From Styela clava (lineage: Eukaryota), in assembly GCF_964204865.1 (NCBI RefSeq), contig NC_135259.1, positions 7,750,001 through 7,814,000 of the forward strand: a DNA stretch of 64,000 bases, written 5' to 3'. How positions within the stretch are numbered: position 1 is the stretch's first letter; each line of letters begins with the position of its first letter. Positions 8,550 through 54,100 of this stretch are shown piece after piece. The notes beneath the pieces were generated by a model that was not told the DNA's origin, ran no database searches, and saw only the letters and a list, made by a program, of their open reading frames with translations. Both the position numbers and the translations under genes were made by a program.

Positions 8550-9500
8550 ATGGCGTCGTCAGCTTCTGTATATAGCATTCACCGCCCGGATTTCAATACA
8601 ATAAAACGCTAGCCTACTTTTAAAAACTTAAGATGGGTCACAACAGGATGCATGGGTGGATGAAACATCTCTAGTACTGTAGTATGGCCAGAGGTTGATA
8701 CCCTGACGTATATGAATATCTTATCAATACACCTGGAATATACACAGAGGAGGCCATGAAAAACAGGAAGAGTTTGGAAGCATACAAAATTGAACCGTTC
8801 CAGCCTTCGGTGTACAAGCTATTAAAAATTTGACGGTGGAATGTTTTTTGTAATTAGAGTATACTTGGGCTCGGACAAGTAATCGTTTCGGTCTATTGAT
8901 AAATATTTCTACAGCAGCCTATGATGCCAATCTTGGGAAGTATTGTCGAAAAAGTGGTGGTAGTGTTTTACTACTCGCTTCACAGTCCAACAAATCAGAA
9001 ACGACATTTTGTTTTCGATTGAATCAATCCAGCGCCAGAATACGTTGTCGAGATTGGATTTAGATAAATCAAATATGTCTGCTAACGTATCAAAATGTTC
9101 GTTTAGGCGTAGTTTCATGAGGGTCATGAGCATTTGATCCACATATTTCATTTTATAATGGCACGGATCTGGCAAACAGGGGCAGAAGAAATTGGACATA
9201 ACATCAAATGTTTCTAATGGTAAATCAGTATAGTAAATTAATTTCTTTGGCTTTTTGCTCAAGTTCTTGTAACTAAAAATGTAAAAATTTTCTAGTTTTT
9301 TCACTGCCTCACTTCTCTCTATTCTATGCTGTAAAAGTTTCGCCTTAAAGTTTTCTAAATTAGCTAAAAAGCTTCATCTTTCTCTTTTCTGATTTGTAAA
9401 TTTTTCTCCTCGAGTAACTCTAATTGATTTTCTTTGGCGGTTGCGTTGACTCACTATGAGATGAAGCTGCAGTATCGACTGGTTCCGGATTTTTATAAAG
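8550..9500. pseudogene. Decayed ISL2EU (PIF/Harbinger-related) transposon: transposase fragment on - and partner-gene fragment on +
   Basis: Minus ORF 8909-9304 has the HTH_Tnp_4-like pattern YYTDLP...DQMLMTLMKLRLN...LADIFDLSKS...VFWRWI. Plus strand ~8699-8788 reads [30 protein letters not shown], a motif I recognise from the SWIM/YqaJ partner gene of these elements. Both are truncated; boundaries approximate. Confidence 0.65.
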
Positions 9501-9689
9501 CTGACCGTAAACAAGGCTAGCAGTGAGAATAAAAATGACTGGAATCGGCGTGAATGTCACCTTCCTATGAAAAGATGTTGCGGCTTGTGGGATGAAGGTG
9601 TGCTCTGTGTTGCACAGCCATCACTTCCGGGTATTTCACGCCGCAGATCAGGAATCACTCTGGCATCTTCGTAAACTGTTGCCGCTCTA

Positions 9690-9830: not shown

Positions 9831-10952
9831 CCAGATAGTGGCATATATACCATTGCATGGATTGGTTAGGATAGGGGTGTGCAACCTTTTTTGCAAGCGG
9901 GCCATATATCAATAACTGGGTTAAACCGCAGGCCGCACCTTTATTTAACATAGGCTTTCCATTAGTTGTTACTGATCTCATGCAGTCCTCATTAGGTGTC
10001 CTTGCAAAAATGATGAGTTAAAACGCATAAATTTCTCAAAACTGTAATCCAAATATATAGACGTCATAGCAAACAAAAACAAGTCTCACAGAGCTAACAG
10101 AAATATTTGAAATAAATAAAAGTAATAGCCTTCTGGAGAAAAATTTCATCTTTCACCAGTAGAAATTTCGAAGCAATCGGTCCAGTAATGAAAGAGAAAA
10201 GCGGATTTTTAGATTTTCCAATAGATGTCCAAAAAGCGTCAAAGACCAACATAATATTGAACGATCGTTATGTCCACTACGTGTCCAATAATAAGTTGAA
10301 CTCAACGACTAACATACCGTTGAACTCGATGACCGCGTGTATGGTCGTATCGCTCCCTCCTGTCCATACCAAAATAATTTTATGGTTGTTACTTTTTATT
10401 GTATTGTATTTTTGGTTGACAAAATAATAAATTTCTCTCTCTCTTGTAATTTAAATTACCTAATTTTATTTCATTGCATCCCCTCTTTTTTGTGAGAAGG
10501 CCGGTCGTAAGCTAACAAACAGACTCATTCATAATAAGTTATAAGTTTATTTCGACTCCATAATCAGCAATAGACGATAAAAAAATAGATAAAAGTAACT
10601 GATTATAGAATCGGGAAAGCGAACAAAACCTAGAGTAAGGTTTGAAACGTACAGATTTTAGATGGAAAAGTATTGATAAAAGAAGTAGTACGTGTTCGCT
10701 CACCCAAAAGTAAAAAAAAAAACTAATTAAGGCAAGCACGCACACACACACAATCATCGAGACATGATACTGGAAGCGAGACTTAAAAGTAAAAAGGTCG
10801 TCATCGCTTTAAATATAGTTCATGGCAACTTTCATCTGACGGAAATGGAAATTACTCGGAACCCAACTAGTATCTAGAAGCTATACAAATAATATATTAA
10901 CTGGTATATCGTACCGATATTATTAATCAGGGGAGAAATATCGGAACGATGC

Positions 10953-41912: not shown

Positions 41913-44900
41913 TTACACAATGTTATTGTTTGTATCTTCTTTCTTCTTTTTTGGAGTTTGAATGTGAAATTGTTTTTGATTTACCGCCACTCGGACGAGT
42001 TTTTTTTTAGTTGTTTTGATTAATGTCGGCCTTGGTTCAGCATCATGATCATTTTCTTCTTCTTGTATTTTTCCTACGTTTCTCTGAATTATTTTTTAAC
42101 AAAATGAATATAAAAATAAACTAAATTCTAGCATGGAATCAAATTAAGCTTTGAATTACTTTGAAAATGTAAAATTTTGGATTGCAATACTAAATAAACG
42201 ATTGTATTTATTGCACCAATCTGCTGTTGTGTTTGAGGGTAACTGCTCGAGGTAAAAATGAATTATAAATTTTATTCTACATTGTGGCTTTAATATAAAA
42301 CCAGAAAATACTCTCATGTTATTATAACCTGAAACACTGGATCATGTGTGTCAATCATGTCCATGGGATTTTCTTCTCCGTTATTCACAGCTTTTTGAAC
42401 CTTTTCCATTAATTTTGCTATTCCTTCTGGCATTCCACTCTTCCCGTCGCGGTGAACAACCGGTGGTTTTGGCTTGCTCGGATGTTGCTTTGGAAAAGTA
42501 TATGTTTGATATTAGATAGATATTTATTTTTGACTTAACATTATGCTTGGAATTCATTTTTTCCATATAGAGAAGACACGACATATTTATATATATATAT
42601 AGGGGGAATGAGTGTGGTTTATGATGTATTAGGTATAGGAACAAAAACAAACAGATAGATTTTGCGCAAACGTAACGGCGCAATTCACAAATTAACAAAT
42701 AAATCGGAGTAAACCTAGGTTGGATACAATGCAGATGTTCCGAGGACATGAATTTTTTTTATGATTTTTCCTCGGGAATAAACATAAATATTTTTGTTCT
42801 TGTTTATATAACCTAACTAACCTACATTATAGAAAACAAAAACAGTTTTGAATAATAGTTATTTAAATTCAACCTTTAATTCAGCCATCTTGCGTTCATA
42901 TTCAGCTTGATTTTGCCTTTGTCTTCTGGCTTTTTCCTTCATTACTTCTTCGTGGCGTTGGGCCTTACTTCGAATCATATTTTCTGTCATCTTTTTCCTT
43001 GAAACGACAAAAAAAATATTTACTGAGCGGAACTTTGAAATCGCAAGAATAATTTAAAATAATATTTTTGTGTAGAATTGGCTAGGTTTGTCATCATGTC
43101 TTTTCCGAGAACTCAAGGCAAACGAGACAATAACTTGATTCCAGTCGTAAACTTTATACGAATCAACTAGTTTTTACTACAAGTCCGTGGACTACTCCTA
43201 TATATCAAGTAACGATATCTGTGATTCATTCATATTCAAGTTGTTTTTTTTGAGTTTCGAATCATGCTTTCTTAGTTTTCACGTGGTGGTAGTGGATGCC
43301 AATATTTCCTTTTCTATTATAAAATACAAATATATGTGTCTTACTTCCAATATACATCTCTTGTGCGAGCATCAACAACGGGATCTCCTGAAGTGACTTC
43401 AAACCACCAGTTCCATTGAAAGTATGGCTGTCTATATTTGTCAACAATTTTGCTTTCGACTGCATACGTTCCTGAGATAAAGATCGATTTTAAATATCAT
43501 AGCATAGCCTACCTATTATAATGTGTTATATTTTTTAAAAATAACTGTTTTTTACCGCAACTCAAATAGCGAGTATTTTATTTCTTGGTGATTTCGCGTG
43601 TCATATTTTTTCGCAAGTGATCATCGAAATATACCATCAACCGGTATGTTTACTGTAATATATAATTTACCTGGTATATTTGGAATTGCAAAATCAGGTG
43701 TTCGGAAGCTGTACTTCTTTGGAATGTCGGGATTTGAAAAATTTGGCGTTTTCTTCCCTGGCCAAGTGAACGTATAATGATCTAGAAAAATATCACATTT
43801 ATTACAATAAAGGGCGTAATGGATTTATTTTCAGGTAATTACATAAATTAGCATGCGATAATATTTGCCTATAAAATTATCTAAAAAGTGAAATATTAAA
43901 ATCGAAATCGTTAAATGTTTATGATTTGAAATGTTGGGAATAATATTATTAGGTTAAATATGGGACATGGTGTTCAATTATCTATTTAATGGTATGACGT
44001 AAATTTTTCTTTTGCTATCTCACTAAATGTGCATCCAGTGAGATGGGTTTTCACTCTTTATATCGTATTTCGTCTAATCTATGTTCAAAAAATATAACAA
44101 TGGGCTACTTACTTTCTCCTTTCTCAAGATGAGATTCGAAATGCTTTTCATCGGTGTAATATAGATATTCCGACGGGTTTAAGACGACCTGTTCGTAAAC
44201 AAAATATGAACATTTAATCAACATGCATTTATTGCATCATGATTTGAAAACGTCTGAAAGCGGTATCTGAGTGGAAAGTTGACAAGACGTAAGGCAAACA
44301 ATCATTTTTGTATGTAGTTATTTTTTAAATAACTATATTTGTGATTAATCACCCATAATTTACACTTTTGCAAGAAACCATCGAAGTGCTGACATTCAGA
44401 TGTGTGAATAAATTTGACTATAGATGGTATGTTTTCGTTTGGTTTGGACATTTCAGTGTCCACAAAAAAAAGAATTTGATGTTGGCATTACTACAAGAAA
44501 TACACGTCAAAACAATCATATAGGAAACAATTTAGTTTTAGTGCGTTGTAAAAAGTCTGCATTTGTTATCTGTTATAGTTAAGCATCTCTTACACGTGCA
44601 AATGCGTACGCGTAATAAATTGAATTAATTAGTGCACATTTGGGAGGGATATGTAAAAATCTGCAGAAAAAGTAACACAATTAAATCAGCACTTCATGAT
44701 AATTGTATTCGTTGTTAACATATTTTGCGATCTTTATAAAAATCATATCTAAAAGCCTTTACGCAAGATTTACACAAGACTGACTTGAGATTAAAAAACC
44801 AGATAAATCAACATATTTATATGGGGAACTTAAAAATCAAATACCTCTATATCAATCTTAAAAGCGAAGTAGTGTCTAAAATGATTTCCTTCGTTTTCAT

Positions 44901-47900
44901 TAACCCATTTGGTTATATCGGGAGGAATCGTTTGTTTCAGAGGTTTTGGCAAACTCTGGTGTGCTCCATAAAAACCAGGGCAGTATTTTACATATGCTGT
45001 TGTATTTTTAGCCAGCACTTCATTGAGTGTAGGGATTCTTTTAACACCGTCTTCTAAAACTTCACTTGGGTCTAAAACTAAACGCGTATCAGTTCCTATT
45101 TGGTGTTTGCCATCTTTATTTATTACAAAGTCTCCACTTGCAGCTTGTTTTCTCAATTTCATCCAACCAAGCCGCATATCATTTCCCAATGCACCCATCA
45201 GTCTAACGTTTGGACGGGACATAATTAGTCTGATAAGCTCTTTATCACTGTGCTTGGGTGGACCTTTTTTGCGTAACGTGTATTTGATCCCGTTTACTTC
45301 CTTTACGATTCCTCCACATAATGCTTGCATTTTGTCGCAAGCCGATTTCGCTGCCGTCAGGTTTGGGTATGAATAATCGGAGTCGTCAATTCGGTCGTGC
45401 TTCTCAAGGGTCTTGTTGATATATGTTTCCCATCGGCAACGACGGATGTCAATATCATCTGAACCACGTATATAACTTAAAAGTTATACTTTTTGTTATG
45501 CAATAGTAATTTCATACAATCACCCAAGCACCCGGAAAGTGTTAGTAGAAAAAATAGCGATGCGATGAAGGAGCACTCGACTACAAATCATGGCGGCGCG
45601 GGCGGTTTAATCTAATCTCTAAAAAAATTTATATTGATTAATGTTTTTGTATCGAAGCAAATATTTACTCACTTGAAAATGCAAGTCGAATGAATAGTGA
45701 TGTGGACAAGGTTTTGAAACATCTGTGCACATGAACGCTGACTTGTGCGGCCTGAACTGTGAAAATTCTCCCGGACAATATCGCAAGTATGCATACTTTT
45801 CAGGCAAGATGTATCGGCGTCGTTCAGCTGACAATCTTTCGTCTCCATTTTCGTCGGGGGATACTGTAGGAGGTTTTGGCGCGGACGGGCCACTTATAAC
45901 CAAGTGTCTAGGAATGCTACCCCTCCTTAAACTATAATTCTCTTGTTTGTTTTCACGTTGAACTCCTGAGCACTCAGGAACAAGTTTGTCGCACAGGTCT
46001 TGTGCTTGTTTGAGATCATGCAACATTGAAAACCGTCGTTTTCTACCATCTGGACCAATTAAATTATCTTTTATAAGTGAAGATTTGCCGTCTTTTCGGA
46101 CGGTACCAGGCCACAGTGAAATATTTTGCGCTTCCTTTTTCTCTGTTAATTCAATGACGAAGTCCAGATACTTCCCGGGAAATTTCTCATAACGACACGG
46201 TCCTGTGAGGGTAGGTATAATGGTAAAGTGGGGTTTGATCGGAAGGGAGAAAAGATAAGTAAAGCAAACAGTTAATGATAATAAATGATGATGACAATAA
46301 ATGATGCATTACAAACAATACAAGCTACGAAATTATAATGAACAACAAAATTGCAGAAGTAGAAACAAAGCAAAAGAGAAATGTGAGTGGTGGATTACGG
46401 TTATCCAGGATCGGGTGGGAACAACGCGTTTGATTTACCTTAAATCGAAGAATAGTATTACTAGCCGCGGAGAAACATCGACACCAAGGTACAATTTTAA
46501 GATGACAAATTTGGATAGTTTGAGTGGATGCATGCAAATTTAATAAATTTAGTGCATAAAAAAGAAGGTTAGTAATCAAATAAGAGTTTTGCGATTTCAT
46601 TTGGCGCAAAGCAAACGAAGATTTGTTAATGGAAGCAAACAGGGTGCAATTATGACGTAGGTTTCTGTTCAACCATGGGGTTTGGACGTCAAAATCCAAC
46701 GACCATGTCCCATGGCTGAATAAGACTATTCACATGCAGATTATATATTAAGACTTTCTCGCAATTGCAAATACATACCTGGATACAGGTCTATATCCAT
46801 TGATGCCCTGCCATCAATATACAGCGTCAGTTTTGTTACTTGAATTCGTCTGATGTCAATAATTAATTTTGTATACATTGGAAAACGTTTTACTTCAAGT
46901 AACCGATATTGCAAATCTGATAACCCGTCAATATCTGCTCTTGTTTTTCTTGTGAGGTTTAGTTTGAAACTAAAAATAATTAATAGTTAATCAGACAACA
47001 ATTAGGTATTTTTTTTAGTTCATTCAATGTTTCTATAAAACTGGCAAAAGGGTTTCTTGTTCATGAAATTGTCATCTGTTTTCAGAAAAATCTATGCAAT
47101 TGAAGTCATTCAAATTTAACTAATCATTAAGATTGAAATGTCTAGAATTTTTTTATCTCGACAGATAGCAAGTGTATACTTATCTGGTAAACTTAACTTA
47201 AAATCTTCAACAATTGATAATTGTATTTTAAATCTACGAACTCGTCGAGATAAAAATATCATCTAACTGTTAACATGTAGCCTCATTTTTATTTAGTCCC
47301 ATTTTGTTTCGTTTTTTGAGAGAATACACAAAAAGAATACTATGTTGTTTTTGCTTTGTCTGACTAGACCAGGGGTTCCCAAACAAGGGTCGCGACCCCA
47401 AAGTGGGTCGGAGTGATAAGTAGGTGGGGTCGCAAACAGGTCATGAGGTCGGTGGGGTCGCTGAGGTATGGTGGAGGATGAATGTACAAAACATCTAAGA
47501 TTTGATAAATCTTGTTAAATTTAGCAGCTTGTACCATGTCTTACTGTAAAACAGGCATATAGGCATCGCTCTATGCCTATGCTATAGAAAATGTAGGTGC
47601 TTATTGCGACATCACTGTTTGGTTTCAGCTTATTTTACCTAATATCACCACATGACCAAACTCAAAAGTCCAGTGAAAGAAGCTCCGAAGTTTCATGAAG
47701 AAATTATATATAGACCTGGGGTCGCACTGGACACTTGAAAGTTGTCTTTGGTGTCGTCCTGAAAAAAGCTTGGGAAACCCTGGACTAGACTAACATTAAA
47801 TAACGTCAGCAGAATTTTAATTACATTAATTATGCAAAACTTTTCTTACGGATATTTATTTGGACTAAATTTCCACGGATGTAAATGCGGAATCATCATG

Positions 47901-50900
47901 TATCTCCCCACTTTCAGCGAAGAAGGAACGATCGTCATATTCCTGCAAAACGGTAGATAGTTTTTTTAATCAATAGAGTGCATATTTATTAAAAGATTAG
48001 ACTTTACACAATCAATTGATATTAATTAAATATAAAAGTAATATAACTCTTACCTATGTTGTATTCTGAATTCCATGTCGTTATCTTCACCTCCCCAACC
48101 CCAGAATCGGTTAGAGTGCCCGTTTGCCTTACGATATTGTGATGGCGTAATTCCTGTGACTCCTCCAAATTCAGTTCCATAATGAGGTTTATACTGAAAT
48201 TTGTCGATTGCTGGGACGATAAGAATTTGTATTTAAATGTCGGTTTGTTTACTGCGAGATTCGCTATCTTTTTGGTAAGCAAGTACATAATAAAATGTAG
48301 AACATCGATTTATTATACTCAGTTTTTATCATAACAATCTGTGCTTCTTTACATGCAGATGGCAGCACTTTTAAACCATCCAAGAAAACTCGGTACAAAT
48401 CAAATGCGTGAAGGATTACATAAAATGTGTTTATATTATTTGATAATGCTCACCAGGAGAGAGATGCCGTGGTTGATCAGCACACATATAAAAGTTTCTA
48501 TCGTTTTCAGGAATCATATCAACATCATGGAAAATTATACAATCGTAATCATCCAACTTCAATGCTTCTTCGAAAGCAGCATTCATGACTGTAGCTTTGT
48601 TGAATTGACCGTTATCAAACTAAAATAATTAGAATTTAGGAATAAAACTGTTGTTGTTTGAAGATTGCCCCAAGCCTTTACGTTCAGTGAAAATTCATGC
48701 GACTTTTTTGATAAATTGCTTTTGATAAAAACGGCCTTCAATTGTTGTCTGCAGTAATAATATAATAAATGATTGAACCTATTATCTATTTATTAATTAA
48801 TGTTAAATACTGGAAAAGATAAATGACTTGAATAACCTTTTTTATTCGATTTGTGTGTAAAAGAGAAAATTACGTTGCAAAAGATTTCCTGGTAATAGCC
48901 CTTAGGGAAATAGATTTATTTGAAATTCTGTACAAACTCAGATAGTTAAATAACTCATAGCAATATCACCTACAAAAATGAGGAAGGGATTAAACAACTT
49001 TGTACTTACCTGCTCTGCTACGTATATGCAGTAATGGATATGTTGTCTCATCAACATAGGATGTAAGTGATACAATAACGTTTTAAGATGTGCATCTCTG
49101 TCCTTGAACGGAATTATAACTGCTACCTTTTGCCTTGAAGAAATTACATATACAAGTCAAAAAAAGTAAACATCAGGGGTCGGATAGTATACTTCCTGTC
49201 TTTTTGCTTATTACAATACTTACAAAGCTATACATTCTTTCGGTGAATAACACCCTCCAATTGATAAACCTGGTCCAACATGTTTTGCAACTTCTTCCAT
49301 CGAAGGTGTAATATTGGGATTGCTCTTCATGTCACCAACTAAAATGAAAAACATAGTAATATAAATATATAGTAAGAGTGACCATAACAAAGGATATGGA
49401 TTTCTTTGCAAGAATGAAAGGTGTCACAATCACCTTTTTATATCAGTTTAAATTTTTAGGTTTTTACAAGGATTTTTTAAAGAAAGGTAAATTCTTCAGA
49501 TTGTTTAATACACGTACAGATTGAATATGTGTGTAACATATTGTAAGTACGGTTTAATAGCGTCATTATATTCTTGTAAGCAGCTTGGGCTTAACTATAC
49601 TATTCCCAAAATAATTTTAAAAACATAGTTCTATAAATAGTTTCATAAAAAGTTGTAGCTTTCAAATATAATATATAAAGTCATATTTTTATCCACACAC
49701 TTGAAGAATAAATGATATACAGCTCATCCTTATCTCACCCAGCTTTGGCGATCGTTTTTTACATTTCTCCAGAGATTTTTGTGATATCTTATCTTTCTCT
49801 TTATTTTCGGCAACTGCTTCGATTTGTCGCGTTACATCTACTTTTTTAACAATTTCTTTTTTAACAATTGGGCTTGTCGCAAGAAGAATTGAAGTACTGG
49901 TGATTGAAGTAATTGGTGTTTGTTTTTGTTGTTCAAGCTCTTGTTGTTGTTGTTGCGGCTGCTCTACTTTCTCTGTTTGTTCTTCCTCAATATGTGCTCG
50001 TTTTTCAAGTTTTGGAGGTTCTGCTTCTAGTTGAGTTCTATTAAAAATGAAGGTGTGATTGACATTGATTTTAGTCAATAATGGACCATCGGTACCACAT
50101 AAACAAAAAAAATTGAACCCAATTTTGTTCAGTAATGCGTTCAACTGGGGCATTTAACATGCTGGGTGCGCCAAACTAAGTAAGTAAGCTATTCGGAGCA
50201 CAAGTGATTACGGTTCATCTAAGCATAATTGCTTGTTACATTTTCAAAAAGCCGGATCCATAAGAGTAAAATTTACAGTGCTTTCCTCATTATGAAACAC
50301 CAAGACAACAGCAGTTCAAATTTCACATTACCTGTAACCAATTTTTTGTATTGCTGTATTTTAGGTTAACGTTGATATAACTGATGACAGAATTTTTTTT
50401 TTCGAAATTGAATATCAACATAGATAACGCCATGGTATTCTTTGAGAAGAATCATGTTTGTATAGCTAAATTACAGTTAAAATAAAAGTACGAACGTGAA
50501 TTAATGAATATTTAATTTAATTCCAGGAAAATGGATATTCTTTGCTATCGATGTCTTAAAGTTAGACAAGTTGACATAGCCCCGGGCATCGCAAAAACTT
50601 TGGTATTTGAATAATTCAACAAAAATACGTAAACAAATCGTCTGTACTCTTACGTGTTATGATGAAATTCGTATTCATTTAATGAATAAATCTGAGTTCA
50701 TCAGTATTACATTAATTAGCATTTCAAACCTGATAAAAAATTCTCTTGGCATTGCCTTACACCAACAGGTAGTGCAAAATTTGGTATTTATCTATGGTTG
50801 GCTGCAAAACACATATGCTGTCAAATTCATTTTGTTTTATGCTCAGGGCCATTGCATAATTTTCAAAAATCGATGATGAGTTCGTGCATACCAAAAAACA

Positions 50901-51199
50901 TATTTTTAGCATCTGAAGAAAATTTGAATGTATATGAAAATCACCGAATGAGTATGTAGTATTTCTTTTCTTTATATCGTCATCAAAAAATTACCATTAT
51001 TTTCGTTTTTGTATGCGGGAGAATGCCTTTTCACTCACCTCACAGATTTTTTTTCCGTAATGTAAACGGTGCATGTGAATAAAAGTACAATGAAGATAAG
51101 AATATTGAGACTACGTTTTCTTCCCCCTAGTCTTAATGAACGTGGACACAACAGCAATGCATTTCTGGCGCTTCTGCTTATTCTCTGTAGCAACGTCAT
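41913..51199 (-). CDS. GT7-family beta-1,4-galactosyltransferase-like type II membrane protein with long C-terminal extension; two predicted isoforms (~867 and ~895 aa)
   Basis: Exons (minus): 51199-51039 (cytoplasmic tail and TM), 50037-49739 (Q/E-rich stem), 49338-49224, 49133-49010 (KVAVIIPFKDR), 48619-48454 (FNKA...FHDVD), 48210-48054 (FGGV, WGWGGEDND), 47942-47850 (GRYMMIPH), 46969-46779 (DGLSDLQY...YTKLIIDI), then either 46202-45673 or 45458-44845, then 44188-44113, 43781-43671, 43471-43345, 42997-42874, 42487-42329, 42083-41913. All junction phases are compatible; the last three exons are less certain. Confidence 0.88.
44845..45458 (-). CDS. GT7 gene alternative exon 9b: PAN/apple-like 4-Cys module, variant B
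   Basis: TTCAG acceptor (phase 1), GAG|GTATTT donor (phase 0); RCRWETY...AKSACDKMQALCGGI...YTLRKKG...AYVKYCPG...HYFAFKIDIE. Confidence 0.8.
45673..46202 (-). CDS. GT7 gene alternative exon 9a: PAN/apple-like 4-Cys module, variant A
   Basis: CTCACAG acceptor (phase 1), GTGAGT donor (phase 0); PCRYEKF...AQDLCDKLVPECSGV...YSLRRG...AYLRYCPG...HYSFDLHFQ. Confidence 0.8.
47370..47782. mobile_element. hAT-type MITE in a GT7 gene intron
   Basis: TIRs CAGGGGTTCCCAAAC / GCTTGGGAAACCCTG; GGGGTCGC subterminal repeats; perfect 8-bp TSD GACTAGAC at 47362-47369 and 47783-47790. Confidence 0.9.
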
Positions 51200-54100
51200 C
51201 TTCTTCAAATAGGGATTTTTTAGTTTATGGAATGTCAACAATTTGTTCGTAAAATTCAAGATTTTCCTATATATTTCATACCGAAGTTTAGATGTTGTTA
51301 GTAGTTACTAGAATGAAAGAATTTGTTTTTTGTTAAAATGTTATACTTTGAACATTCTATGAGATTATACGTGAAATAACTTTCATTCCGGTATGTAAGA
51401 AACTAGACAATCAAATTAGCCTGTCCATATTTGATTTTTAGGTCCCAGTACTCGCAGTTAAATATGAAAGCTTCATATCTATATCTCATTACTCATAATA
51501 CTGTTCACTATACGAATACACGCTTTTCTGAAAAATTACTGCCTATATGAAGTTATCCCTGCTCGTGATAGTAGAGCATATATTTGCTTTAACTATCTTT
51601 CAAATCTTGTCAACTACATAAATGATTTTCTATACCAACTTCCAGCACACAGTATATTTTCTAATACCTATTCACCTAATCGTTTTGCATATGTGCTCTT
51701 TAGTTGCAAGAAGACATACATCTGTATTTTTGTTCCCGTTTTTGATGCAGTAAAGGCAGTTTTGGTACTTTAGTTTCTATTATGTTCTGTCTTAAAACCA
51801 CTCATGCAATTGAGTATATTTCTGAATAATTCATAAAGCGAGCACTGTAATCAAAATTTCTAATCGGTACATTTTGTCGCAAGTTCTTAACCCTCAGAAT
51901 AGACATTCAATTATCACAGAAAAATAGTTTTCCAGATTTCTATCGCGCGGTGTTGCTTCTGCGTCGAACCCCTCAGGGTGTTATAATATAACGAACGTGT
52001 ATCATATTATTAATAAATATGCCCCGCAGCTATACTGGACCGATAACCTGATCGGCAAGCTTCCGTGATATTATATTGAAAAGCAACAATTTTACGACCA
52101 TTTTCGTGTAACAACAATATGTTTCAAAGTTTTTATTTTGGAAAATTCTATCTAAACTCAACGTCAAATAACTATTTTGAAATTCGGAACTCACTTGACA
52201 ATTCCATCGGCGCACTTGGTGCTGAAATGTATGTATAAGCTATAAAATAACTTACATTGAAATTGGTGTACATTACTTTTGTCAGCGTACGTTGAAACAA
52301 GTAAATACTCACAAAAGCCTAGTTAAATAAAGTATGAAATGATTTATTCCAATATTCCCACGTTAAACCAATTTATTTGCCTCACACATGATTCTATGCC
52401 AAAGACAACCTGGCAACTGAATGTCAATTCAGGATTTTTTACAGTATGTTTTTATCTGGAATAATTTGTAATAAGATCCGTCAGGGGCCTCGTTCTGTAT
52501 TTACCTTCATATAAAAACAAGACTATCTTAAGGTTTTAGAAGTGAGAACGAAGTGATATTAAAAATTGGCGTATTTAATCTTGCTTACATCTACAAATGC
52601 ACCAAAAACGTTGGTAATCGCGTTGTTGAAACAAAACATCTGATTACGACACCAAAGAAGTTGATATGAAATGAATAATATATACTATTTCAAATAATAA
52701 CAAAAATCAGCTATTCGATTTTGCCTATTTTTGCCATCGTACAATTCAATCTTTGCTTGCTTTTGGAATATTACTCTCCCGTTTTAATCGTTGTCTTCGC
52801 TTATCTATAGTGTTTAATTAGTATATCTACGGTACTGCCTATTTCTAAAGTTTGTCAATTGCATAATGAAAATTTGAGATTTTATCAAAAAGTTTCTCTC
52901 CTATAAAACGGTAGTCAAACTGCATATAAATAATTGATGAGAAATGAAATAGTTGTTTTAAAATGTCTGAATATCGAACACATATAGCGATTGCATCGAA
53001 TTGTCGAACGAGAAATTACTGCAGTCGTTTGGGCCAGATAACAAACATAATTCTGTATTTTCTTATATATGTCTAGGCCCCATTATCTATACCAAAAATG
53101 TTTTGGTACAAATAAATAAAAACGGATTGAATATATATTGTGATATTTTAATAGATGGATTATCTTTATTTAGCATAACAAACAACAATCAACAAATAAA
53201 GTTTAATTGCAGACATATAAACGACAACAATGTATACCGAAAGAGTTTAATCCAAATTATAAAATCTTAAAATTTAACGTTTTGGGTAGTAAAGCTTGAT
53301 AGGCGCAATTTCATAAATTATTCGTATAAACAATGATAACATGCGACTAATCCAGCCAACTACATTTCTTAATTAAAAGCACATTTTGATTTTTGATTAT
53401 TCTTAATTTATTCACTCCATGCAAAAGTCAAGCTAACCAAATTTCTGCATTAGAACAACTAGCACAGACGAAATTCAAATGTTCTTTGCATTCAACTATC
53501 GCATTGAAATGAAACATCTAACAAAATGAGAAAATATATTTCTATAGCTGAGCCCTCAGGTCGCCGATACGCACACATATAAACACGTAGTCAAAGGTTT
53601 AGAATAATTTATGTAAAATTTGTCGTGGTTAAAAATAAGAGTCAATGTGCTTCAGTTTGTTAGCAATTCTCAACAAAATAAGGCTTAACAGTCATAACGC
53701 TGTTGTATGAACGAGCAAGTCTATTTGTTGAATATTGCCTAGCCTCTCTTCCAATGAGGTAGTTTTCTTCATTAGTCAGTTTTTTAACGTTGCCAAAAAC
53801 AATGGAATTATAAATTTATTAATTTAAAGACAAGAACGGAAGGGCACCATACAGCTACAACAATCCAAATGCGATACAGAATTGCATCAGTATATATCTA
53901 AAAAAAATCTTTTTTTAACTAATCTACTGCAACTGCAGGCAAGTTCTATTCTGATTTGAGAGAACAACATTTTCAACTATCTCTGAAGCATACACAACTG
54001 TACAACCTATGCAGAACTAGACTTCAAAATGAATAGTAAATTCTAGCTTATTGGACACGTGAGTGGACCTATGGATCGTTTCAGTATTAATGGTGTTTGT

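What the first reader, a model, noticed from the sequence alone, without database searches (positions are those of the whole stretch)
44845..46202. Mutually exclusive tandem exons swap a PAN/apple-like module on a glycosyltransferase
Seen: two adjacent long exons (530 and 614 nt) encode homologous domains with the same four-Cys skeleton (C-x-[YW]E ... CDKxxxxC[SG]G[VI] ... Y[ST]LR[RK] ... AYxxYCPG ... HY). Both start in phase 1 and end in phase 0, so each alone joins the upstream exon (ends 46779, phase 1) to the downstream exon (starts 44188, phase 0), giving HYSFDLHFQ|VVLNPSEY or HYFAFKIDIE|VVLNPSEY. Splicing 9a to 9b via the consensus GTGAGT donor shifts frame and reaches TGA after ~33 codons, and skipping both also shifts frame. 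Established: this is the hallmark of mutually exclusive exons from exon duplication, and PAN/apple modules bind glycans or proteins. Inference: one gene makes two Golgi enzymes with the same catalytic core but different acceptor-recognition modules, a splice-encoded glycosylation switch. I know of no such arrangement in GT7 enzymes.
Basis: partly seen in the sequence, partly recalled or inferred. Interest (0 to 1): 0.9.

Follow-up and report, generated by a model that had tools for sequence, protein, structure and literature searches.

The report
Alternative exon pair swaps glycosyltransferase module
A sea-squirt (Styela clava) galactosyltransferase-like gene uses one or the other of two ancient duplicated exons, giving two enzymes with the same catalytic core but different PAN-like add-on modules; the splicing is real and conserved in other ascidians, but its function is untested.

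Summary
On the minus strand, exons 46202-45673 (530 nt, "9a") and 45458-44845 (614 nt, "9b") encode homologous modules (hhalign 96%, E 1e-9). Both start in phase 1 and end in phase 0.

- **Frame:** either exon alone keeps the frame to one shared stop. Both, neither, or the retained intron give early stops.
- **RNA:** contigs show ex8->9a->ex10 and ex8->9b->ex10. No spliced 9a->9b joint appears. A minor 9a+intron+9b form does.
- **Gene:** it is Styela clava LOC120337292, a type-II B4GALT1-like GT7 protein with a long C-terminal extension.
- **Already annotated:** RefSeq lists both forms, X2 = 9a (867 aa) and X1 = 9b (895 aa), as "uncharacterized". I found no paper on it.
- **Conservation:** two Phallusia mammillata cDNA proteins are identical up to the same junction, then carry an a-type or a b-type module. 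An unnamed metagenome contig has the same a-then-b order, phases and 3n+2 lengths.
- **PAN/apple:** only remotely supported. There is no direct Pfam hit. The joint profile finds repeat proteins that score as PAN_1. AlphaFold models are poor.
- **Function:** the acceptor-recognition switch is plausible, with PGANT9A/B as precedent, but untested.

It is a new member of a known kind, of moderate interest.

The parts
46779..46969 (-). Constant exon upstream of the pair ('exon 8'). It encodes the end of the GT7 catalytic domain plus a linker (...DIDLYP) and ends in phase 1, with donor GTATGT.
   Evidence: RNA joints 46969<-47850, 46779->46202 and 46779->45458; frame check.
45673..46202 (-). Exon 9a: 530 nt, 176 aa, the a-type module. 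It has a strong polypyrimidine acceptor and a GTGAGT donor. It corresponds to residues 437-612 of RefSeq isoform X2.
   Evidence: Joints to exon 8 in X1, X2, X4 and X5, and to exon 10 in X1, X2 and X5. Identical to P0012.
45459..45672 (-). The 214-nt intron between 9a and 9b. No spliced removal joining 9a to 9b is seen. It is retained in a minor transcript class, and an in-frame stop follows 17 codons after 9a.
   Evidence: Contigs run unbroken over 44843-45700 (X1, depth 60) and 45308-45700 (X2, depth 40), against about 9 for the neighbouring introns. Stop position.
44845..45458 (-). Exon 9b: 614 nt, 204 aa, the b-type module with a roughly 70-aa insert. Its acceptor is weaker (ttcag after a purine-interrupted tract) and its donor is GTATTT. 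It corresponds to residues 437-640 of RefSeq isoform X1.
   Evidence: Joint 46779->45458 in X4, and 44845->44188 in X1, X2 and X4. 203/204 identical to P0048.
44113..44188 (-). Constant exon downstream ('exon 10'), starting in phase 0 (VVLNPSEY...). It accepts either 9a or 9b.
   Evidence: Joints; frame.
43671..43781 (-). Constant exon of the C-terminal extension.
   Evidence: Joints.
43345..43471 (-). Constant exon of the C-terminal extension. It lies in a block highly conserved with Phallusia (...QPYFQWNWWFEVTSGD...).
42874..42997 (-). Constant exon encoding a charged, helical-looking stretch.
42329..42487 (-). Constant exon.
41913..42083 (-). Coding part of the last exon. The stop codon at 41915-41913 is shared by both isoforms.
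47850..47944 (-). Exon of the GT7 catalytic domain (C-terminal part).
48431..49411 (-). Span holding upstream GT7 catalytic exons, including the DVD motif. ORF pieces lie at 48434-48586 and 49223-49411.
   Evidence: Pfam Glyco_transf_7N, E 2.6e-14 and 0.012. The full protein P0012 scores GT7N 3.9e-52 and GT7C 4.7e-21.

Best explanation
Exons 9a and 9b of Styela clava LOC120337292 are an ancient tandem exon duplication that is spliced in a mutually exclusive way.

**The gene.** It encodes a type-II membrane protein with a B4GALT1-like GT7 catalytic domain (residues about 141-411). A C-terminal extension of roughly 450 aa follows.

**The swap.** The first part of that extension comes from exon 9a or from exon 9b. 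Both are versions of one Cys-containing module whose N-terminal core (helix, Cys-x6-Cys, Gly, strand, Y-[ST]-L-R) is PAN/apple-like. The b version carries a roughly 70-aa insert. The a version has one extra Cys pair.

**Shown.**
- Each exon alone links exon 8 (phase 1) to exon 10 (phase 0).
- Both isoforms exist as RNA.
- The ratio differs between samples: 9a dominates in three of the four runs laid, and 9b is about equal in the fourth.
- The pair, its order, its phases and its 3n+2 lengths are conserved in other ascidians.

**Inferred.**
- Exclusivity is enforced at least by reading frame. Double inclusion, double skipping and intron retention all create early stops and would be removed by nonsense-mediated decay.
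- 9a is the default because its acceptor is stronger, and 9b needs a sample-specific activator.
- The swap changes what the enzyme binds (acceptor glycan, protein or partner), not its chemistry.
For: **Sequence and frame**
- Anatomy and frames.
- Homology of the two exons: BLASTP E 2e-6; hhalign 96.4%, E 1.2e-9.

**RNA**
- Spliced joints with CT..AC ends, which are GT..AG on the minus strand.
- ex8->9a in X1, X2, X4 and X5.
- 9a->ex10 in X1, X2 and X5.
- ex8->9b in X4 (one contig, 1241 nt, that continues through 9b and four downstream exons).
- 9b->ex10 in X1, X2 and X4.
- A 3176-nt X5 contig carries the full 9a form.
- No 9a->9b joint is listed.

**Annotation**
- NCBI isoform X2 (P0012, 867 aa) holds 9a, and X1 (P0048, 895 aa) holds 9b. 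They are otherwise identical except for one substitution.

**Conservation**
- Five a-type and five b-type ORFs from other organisms are 61-68% and 52-60% identical to the Styela exons.
- The a/b split has 100/99 support, and both clades contain several species.
- Phallusia mammillata P0015 (a-type) and P0049 (b-type) are 100% identical over 193 aa up to ...MDIDINP, then diverge.
- Metagenome contig L007 has the upstream exon (phase 1), an a-type exon of 524 nt with a GTGAGT donor, a b-type exon of 593 nt 423 nt further on, then the constant exons.

**Family and domain**
- GT7.
- PAN-like core.
- The module is single-copy in the genome.
Against: - All RNA evidence comes from assembled contigs. 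These show presence, not absence, and give no reliable quantities.
- The ex8->9b joint in X4 has only 30 nt on the exon-8 side, one short of the tool's own bridging rule.
- In X1 and X2 the 9b signal is continuous with the unspliced 9a-9b intron. There, 9b may come mostly from an unproductive form.
- RefSeq isoforms are automatic models, probably built from overlapping RNA data.
- Phallusia P0015 is partial, and its tail looks like read-through into an intron. The a-type-to-exon-10 junction is therefore not shown in that species.
- Neither exon has a direct Pfam PAN hit.
- The AlphaFold models are poor (pLDDT 43 and 41).
- Structure searches give only noise, Z <= 3.2.
- No evidence bears on enzyme activity, Golgi location or acceptor binding.
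Confidence: 0.85

Rival explanations
1. The swap is real, but it does not re-aim acceptor choice. The module would instead control oligomerisation, Golgi sub-localisation or shedding, or binding of a regulatory partner. Alpha-lactalbumin plays that last role for B4GALT1.
For: - No evidence ties the module to glycans.
- PAN/apple domains bind proteins as often as carbohydrates (general knowledge).
- A conserved constant block and a charged helical tail follow the module, which suggests a larger accessory assembly.
- The fold is unresolved.
Against: - C-terminal lectin-type domains direct substrate choice in GT27 GalNAc-transferases.
- A spliced lectin sub-domain changes specificity in Drosophila PGANT9 (PMC6115407).
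- Both module versions have been kept for a very long time beside one catalytic core.
Confidence: 0.35
2. Exon 9b is mainly a regulatory 'poison' element. Its inclusion, together with 9a and the unspliced intron, produces stop-containing RNA that lowers enzyme output rather than making a second protein.
For: - In X1 and X2 the 9b contig runs unbroken through the 214-nt intron into 9a, at about the same depth as 9b itself.
- No ex8->9b joint is listed for those two runs.
- That form stops 17 codons after 9a.
Against: - An X4 contig joins exon 8 directly to 9b and carries on in frame.
- RefSeq X1 and the full-length Phallusia P0049 both carry the b-type module.
- The b-type ORF is kept open, at 52-60% amino-acid identity in five other organisms and at 99/41% in L007/Phallusia. 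The 3n+2 length is conserved.
Confidence: 0.07
3. Both exons are normally included together, as a tandem two-module protein, through alternative splice sites that restore the frame.
Against: - No such joint appears in four RNA runs.
- No database protein carries both modules.
- The +4 donor is not conserved in L007.
Confidence: 0.02

Closest known systems
Drosophila PGANT9A/PGANT9B (GT27 polypeptide GalNAc-transferase), alternative exons 8A/8B (PMC6115407)
   Same: One glycosyltransferase gene keeps one catalytic domain. Alternative versions of one exon change an accessory C-terminal binding domain, and in PGANT9 this changes substrate preference. This is the best functional precedent for a 'splice-encoded glycosylation switch'.
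   Different: - The enzyme family differs (GT27 versus GT7).
- The accessory domain in PGANT9 is a ricin-type beta-trefoil lectin, and only its alpha sub-repeat is swapped.
- Here a whole 176/204-aa PAN-like module is swapped.
- Here the two versions are only about 20% identical.
- Function is shown for PGANT9 and not here.
Classical mutually exclusive exon pairs from tandem exon duplication (for example insect chitin synthase 1 a/b, PMC3619095; SCN alpha exon 5a/5b; Dscam arrays)
   Same: - The exons are adjacent and homologous.
- They share a phase and have similar lengths.
- One or the other is used.
- The pair is anciently conserved.
- Frame-shift plus nonsense-mediated decay is a known way to enforce exclusivity when exon lengths are not multiples of three.
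   Different: - The exons here are unusually long and diverged (530 and 614 nt).
- They differ in length by 84 nt.
- They encode a complete module rather than a segment of a domain.
- No docking/selector RNA pairing was found.
Vertebrate B4GALT1 (GT7), solved structures such as 1yro and 1nf5
   Same: - The catalytic domain aligns over residues 141-411 at E 4e-73.
- The DVD and WGWGGED motifs are present.
- Both have type-II topology.
   Different: - B4GALT1 ends right after the catalytic domain, whereas this protein adds about 450 aa.
- The donor-pocket Tyr289 position is Glu here and in Phallusia, so the sugar donor is uncertain.
UGT1A locus (alternative first exons on shared exons 2-5; general knowledge)
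   Same: One locus combines alternative substrate-binding halves with a common remainder.
   Different: - UGT1A uses alternative promoters and first exons, not internal mutually exclusive exons.
- In UGT1A the swapped part belongs to the catalytic fold.

Membership tests
Mutually exclusive exon pair from tandem exon duplication | Adjacent exons that are homologous to each other. | tested here: met
   BLASTP E 2e-6. hhalign 96.4%, E 1.2e-9. Shared motifs in alignment A1.
Mutually exclusive exon pair from tandem exon duplication | Same entry and exit phase, so that either exon alone preserves the frame. | tested here: met
   Both exons enter in phase 1 and leave in phase 0. 9a-only and 9b-only reach the same stop. 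Both together, or neither, give early stops.
Mutually exclusive exon pair from tandem exon duplication | Mature transcripts contain one exon or the other, not both spliced together. | tested here: met
   All four expected joints are seen, and no 9a->9b joint. RefSeq X1/X2 agree. Caveats: contigs cannot prove absence, and a minor intron-retaining form holds both exons.
Mutually exclusive exon pair from tandem exon duplication | Both copies are conserved in orthologues. | tested here: met
   The a and b clades each hold several species. Phallusia has a-type and b-type cDNAs of one gene. L007 has the same order, phases and 3n+2 lengths.
GT7 (beta-1,4-galactosyltransferase family) | Glyco_transf_7N and Glyco_transf_7C domains with the DVD metal-binding motif. 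| tested here: met
   On P0012: PF13733 E 3.9e-52 and PF02709 E 4.7e-21. Bovine B4GALT1 E 4e-73 with DVD and WGWGGED aligned.
GT7 (beta-1,4-galactosyltransferase family) | Canonical Gal-donor pocket residue (Tyr289 of bovine B4GALT1). | tested here: not met
   The aligned position is Glu (…YGTEFGGV…) in Styela, and the same in Phallusia. The protein is a family member by fold and sequence, but galactose transfer itself is not established.
PAN/apple domain (Pfam PAN_1/PAN_4) | Direct match to a PAN profile. | tested here: not met
   No Pfam family at E<=10 for either exon peptide.
PAN/apple domain (Pfam PAN_1/PAN_4) | Transitive or remote homology to PAN-containing proteins over the helix/Cys-Cys/strand core. 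| tested here: inconclusive
   - The joint profile hits repeat proteins P0013 (E 4e-25, 9 stretches) and P0019 (E 3e-15).
- 7 of 20 such hits score as PAN_1, best 1.3e-11. That score is a sum of weak repeats, with no single stretch significant.
- ESM-Atlas named neighbours are PAN clusters at 0.82-0.85.
PAN/apple domain (Pfam PAN_1/PAN_4) | The fold: a beta-sheet cradling a helix, tied by 2-3 disulfides. | tested here: inconclusive
   - AlphaFold models are of low confidence (pLDDT 43 and 41), although the core is predicted as strand-helix-strand-strand-strand.
- Structure search gives Z <= 3.2. PAN-containing chains (HGF NK1, leech anti-platelet protein) appear only within the noise.
- There are four conserved Cys, against four to six in PAN/apple.
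Ricin-type/beta-trefoil lectin (for the b-specific insert) | Sequence or fold match to a beta-trefoil repeat. | tested here: not met
   There is only a weak summed hit to the designed lectin MITSUBA-1 (E 0.0035, single stretches E about 2-3). Pfam finds nothing. The insert is predicted helical.

The most novel reading that the evidence does not exclude
Ascidians have kept, probably since before the stolidobranch/phlebobranch split, a B4GALT1-derived enzyme with an altered donor pocket. Its target would be set by a splice-selected PAN-like lectin or adaptor module. Tissues would then switch which glycoconjugate is built (for example tunic or extracellular-matrix glycans versus others) by exon choice alone. 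That would be the first such switch in the GT7 family.
Probability: 0.3. Interest if true: 0.65.

Novelty: new member of a known kind. Interest (0 to 1): 0.5.

Why it matters
B4GALT-type enzymes are thought to gain acceptor specificity from their catalytic domain or from partner proteins such as alpha-lactalbumin.

A conserved, exon-selected accessory module would be a different and genetically tractable way to diversify glycosylation. It would parallel the PGANT9 lectin-domain switch, but in another enzyme family and in a chordate.

The locus is also a clean, deeply conserved example of very long and highly diverged mutually exclusive exons, useful for studying how exclusivity is enforced.

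It shows, too, that Styela clava has a B4GALT1-like gene, although the genome paper reported none (PMC7540406).

The practical value is limited until activity and binding are measured.

Tried and rejected
I could not fetch the Logan and ENA contigs that carry the a-type and b-type ORFs of close relatives.
- Co-location there is only inferred from equal contig lengths: P0004/P0008 at 4747 nt and P0003/P0009 at 2170 nt.

**Structure**
- Both AlphaFold jobs gave low-confidence models.
- VIA-align searches of them gave only noise, Z <= 3.2.
- Foldseek was not run on these models, because it would be meaningless.
- A PDB sequence search with the joint profile gave only a weak MITSUBA-1 beta-trefoil hit for the b-specific insert. 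I rejected it because Pfam is blank and the insert is predicted helical.
- A PDB search with the PAN-like repeat protein P0019 found nothing.

**RNA structure**
- A search for docking/selector pairing found only short AT-rich imperfect inverted repeats, at about the number expected by chance. I make no claim of a structure-based mechanism.
- Steric hindrance is unlikely, because the intron is 214 nt.
- U2/U12 incompatibility is unlikely, because all sites are GT-AG.

**Paralogues and literature**
- The own-genome search found no paralogous module. Two hits on another contig, at E 0.3-0.6, are treated as chance.
- Literature searches found no paper on this gene or on mutually exclusive exons in GT7.
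- A link to the notochord 'beta4-GalT' gene of Ciona and Oikopleura (PMC3034685) could not be established.

**Joined models**
- Exons were joined only inside a script, for frame checking.
- No typed or joined spliced model was sent to any search tool.
- Full-length searches used the database proteins P0012, P0048 and P0049 returned by the tools. Exon peptides were searched by reference, exon by exon.

Full report
**1. What is in the sequence**

The gene runs on the minus strand.
- Exon 9a is 46202-45673 (530 nt). Its acceptor follows a long pyrimidine tract (…ccctcacag), and its donor is GTGAGT.
- Exon 9b is 45458-44845 (614 nt). Its acceptor (…acgtggttcag) has a poorer pyrimidine tract, and its donor is GTATTT.
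- The upstream constant exon ends at 46779 in phase 1.
- The downstream constant exon starts at 44188 in phase 0.
- The introns are 576 nt (exon 8 to 9a), 214 nt (9a to 9b) and 656 nt (9b to exon 10).

The peptides are 176 and 204 aa. They are homologous beyond chance: BLASTP E 2e-6, and profile-profile 96.4% probability, E 1.2e-9, over 125 columns. They are only about 20% identical.

**2. Frame logic**

I joined the exons inside a script only, and only to test frames.
- 9a alone and 9b alone both read to the same stop, at 41915-41913.
- 9a+9b through the GTGAGT donor stops after 33 codons.
- Skipping both stops 13 codons after the exon-8/exon-10 junction.
- Keeping the 214-nt intron stops after 17 codons.
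- Both exon lengths are 3n+2.

**3. RNA evidence**

Four public runs of the same organism, from two studies, were laid on 42001-48000. They are assembled contigs with spliced joints whose ends are CT..AC, which is GT..AG on the minus strand. They therefore derive from RNA.

| Joint | Runs |
|---|---|
| 46779->46202 (exon 8 to 9a) | X1, X2, X4, X5 |
| 45673->44188 (9a to exon 10) | X1, X2, X5 |
| 46779->45458 (exon 8 to 9b) | X4 |
| 44845->44188 (9b to exon 10) | X1, X2, X4 |

- In X5, a 3176-nt contig is the complete 9a form.
- In X4, a 1241-nt contig runs from exon 8 through 9b, exon 10 and four further exons.
- No 9a->9b joint is listed, including through the GTAAAT donor 4 nt downstream.

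Caveats:
- Contigs show presence, not absence.
- Contig depths are not quantitative.
- The exon-8 side of the X4 joint is 30 nt, the k-1 overlap of a unitig. That is one short of the tool's own bridging rule.

With those limits, 9a dominates in X1, X2 and X5, and 9b is about level with 9a in X4. So usage depends on the sample.

One result was unforeseen. In X1 and X2 the 9b contig runs unbroken through the 214-nt intron into 9a. Its depth there is 40-60, against about 9 for the other two introns. A minor RNA class therefore holds 9a, the intron and 9b, then splices from 9b to exon 10. It carries an early stop.

**4. Identity of the gene**

A profile search of 1.8 billion representative proteins returned a full-length protein identical to the window. 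A region-limited search named it: Styela clava LOC120337292, 'uncharacterized protein'.
- Isoform X2 (P0012, 867 aa) carries 9a at residues 437-612.
- Isoform X1 (P0048, 895 aa) carries 9b at residues 437-640, 203/204 identical to the window.
- The two are identical outside the swapped module except for one substitution.

So the public automatic annotation already contains the exon swap. I found no paper about it.

The protein has:
- an N-terminal signal-anchor-like hydrophobic stretch;
- a Q-rich stem;
- GT7N and GT7C domains that align to bovine and human B4GALT1 at E 4e-73 over residues 141-411;
- the variable module;
- a constant block that is highly conserved with Phallusia;
- a charged tail.

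**5. Conservation**

Exon-by-exon searches found five a-type ORFs (61-68% identity) and five b-type ORFs (52-60% identity) in other organisms.

A maximum-likelihood tree of 27 module sequences splits a-type from b-type with 100/99 support. Each side holds several species, with mirrored sister pairs (P0008/P0009 and P0004/P0003).

Two Phallusia mammillata cDNA-derived proteins belong to the family. P0015 (a-type) residues 1-193 are 100% identical to P0049 (b-type) residues 196-388. The identity ends at …MDIDINP, the same junction as …MDIDLYP in Styela. After it, one continues with an a-type module and the other with a b-type module. P0049 is colinear with Styela X1 along its whole length, at 47% identity. 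P0015 is partial, and its tail looks like read-through into the intron after the a-type exon.

A JGI metagenome contig from an unnamed relative (L007) has this layout:
- an upstream exon ending in phase 1;
- an a-type exon of 524 nt (9010-9533, donor GTGAGT);
- a 423-nt intron;
- a b-type exon of 593 nt (9957-10549);
- the constant exons.

Both of its variable exons are again 3n+2.

In the tree the b clade joins the Styela group to Phallusia. From general knowledge these belong to different ascidian orders. The duplication is therefore old, and both copies have stayed open and conserved. In Styela clava the module is single-copy.

I could not fetch the contigs of the closer relatives. Their co-location is inferred only from equal contig lengths.

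**6. What the module is**

Pfam gives nothing for either exon at E<=10.

The joint a+b profile also hits proteins made of 2-9 repeats of about 75-85 aa. These share the same core: [W/C]-x2-[H/E], KYL, then helix-Cys-x6-Cys-Gly-Gly-[VI]-T-x-E, then Y-T-[TL]-R-K-G. Seven of 20 such proteins score as PAN_1, best E 1.3e-11. That score is a sum of weak repeats, and no single stretch is significant.

The named ESM-Atlas neighbours of both exons are PAN clusters, at 0.82-0.85, which is lead quality only.

AlphaFold models built from six-sequence alignments are poor, at pLDDT 43 and 41. The core is predicted as strand-helix-three strands. Structure searches give Z <= 3.2. PAN-containing chains (HGF NK1, leech anti-platelet protein) appear only within the noise.

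My reading is that the N-terminal half is a divergent PAN/apple-like domain, with probability about 0.6. The C-terminal half (AYxxYCPG…HY) and the b-specific insert have no assigned fold. A weak beta-trefoil lead is rejected.

**7. Mechanism**

Shown:
- two in-frame isoforms;
- sample-dependent choice between them;
- an ancient, conserved pair.

Inferred:
- Exclusivity rests at least on the reading frame, with decay of the out-of-frame products.
- 9a is the default because its acceptor is stronger.
- 9b needs activation.

No RNA docking/selector pairing stands out.

The functional reading is that the same catalytic core is paired with a different binding module. It is supported only by analogy with lectin domains of GalNAc-transferases and with the PGANT9A/B exon 8A/8B switch (PMC6115407). 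A role in partner binding, oligomerisation or localisation is equally open.

**8. Verdict**

The PAN label is plausible but remote. The 'glycosylation switch' is untested.

The phenomenon is a new, well-conserved member of a known kind: mutually exclusive exons from tandem duplication. It sits in an unusual GT7 architecture and is already present, without comment, in RefSeq.

Noticed in passing
window 48054-48210 (minus strand) and P0012 residues about 296-306: In the alignment to bovine B4GALT1, the donor-pocket Tyr289 position is Glu (…YGTEFGGV…). The same holds in the Phallusia orthologue. The sugar donor of this GT7 enzyme may therefore not be UDP-Gal. This matches the scan's separate note s1-815971.
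   Followed up: partly
window 45459-45672: RNA contigs in two runs run unbroken through the 214-nt intron between 9a and 9b, at 4-6 times the depth of the neighbouring introns. This gives a stop-containing 9a+intron+9b RNA. The partial Phallusia cDNA protein P0015 also seems to read into the intron after its a-type exon.
   Followed up: partly
window 47380-47800 (intron between the exons at 47850 and 46969): This is a dispersed repeat of about 410 nt, with at least 433 candidate copies in the genome at 88-93% identity. It explains the very high RNA contig depth and the loose ends seen here in all four runs. It has no Rfam match.
   Followed up: partly
whole gene, window about 41913-51259 minus strand: The Styela clava genome paper states that beta-1,4-galactosyltransferase 1 could not be identified in S. 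clava (PMC7540406). This gene has a clear B4GALT1-like catalytic domain, at E 4e-73.
   Followed up: partly
window 44845-45456, b-type residues 151-153: An N-x-T sequon (NTT) directly before the YCPG motif is invariant in all six close b-type sequences and absent from the a-type. That fits a luminal, glycosylated module. It is not kept in the distant L007 copy.
   Followed up: no
G000:C17:15064778-15068984 (loci L003, L004): Two long open frames (577 and 731 aa) on another contig give weak matches (E 0.3-0.6) to the helix/Cys-Cys core of the b-type module. They may be PAN-like repeat genes or chance matches.
   Followed up: no
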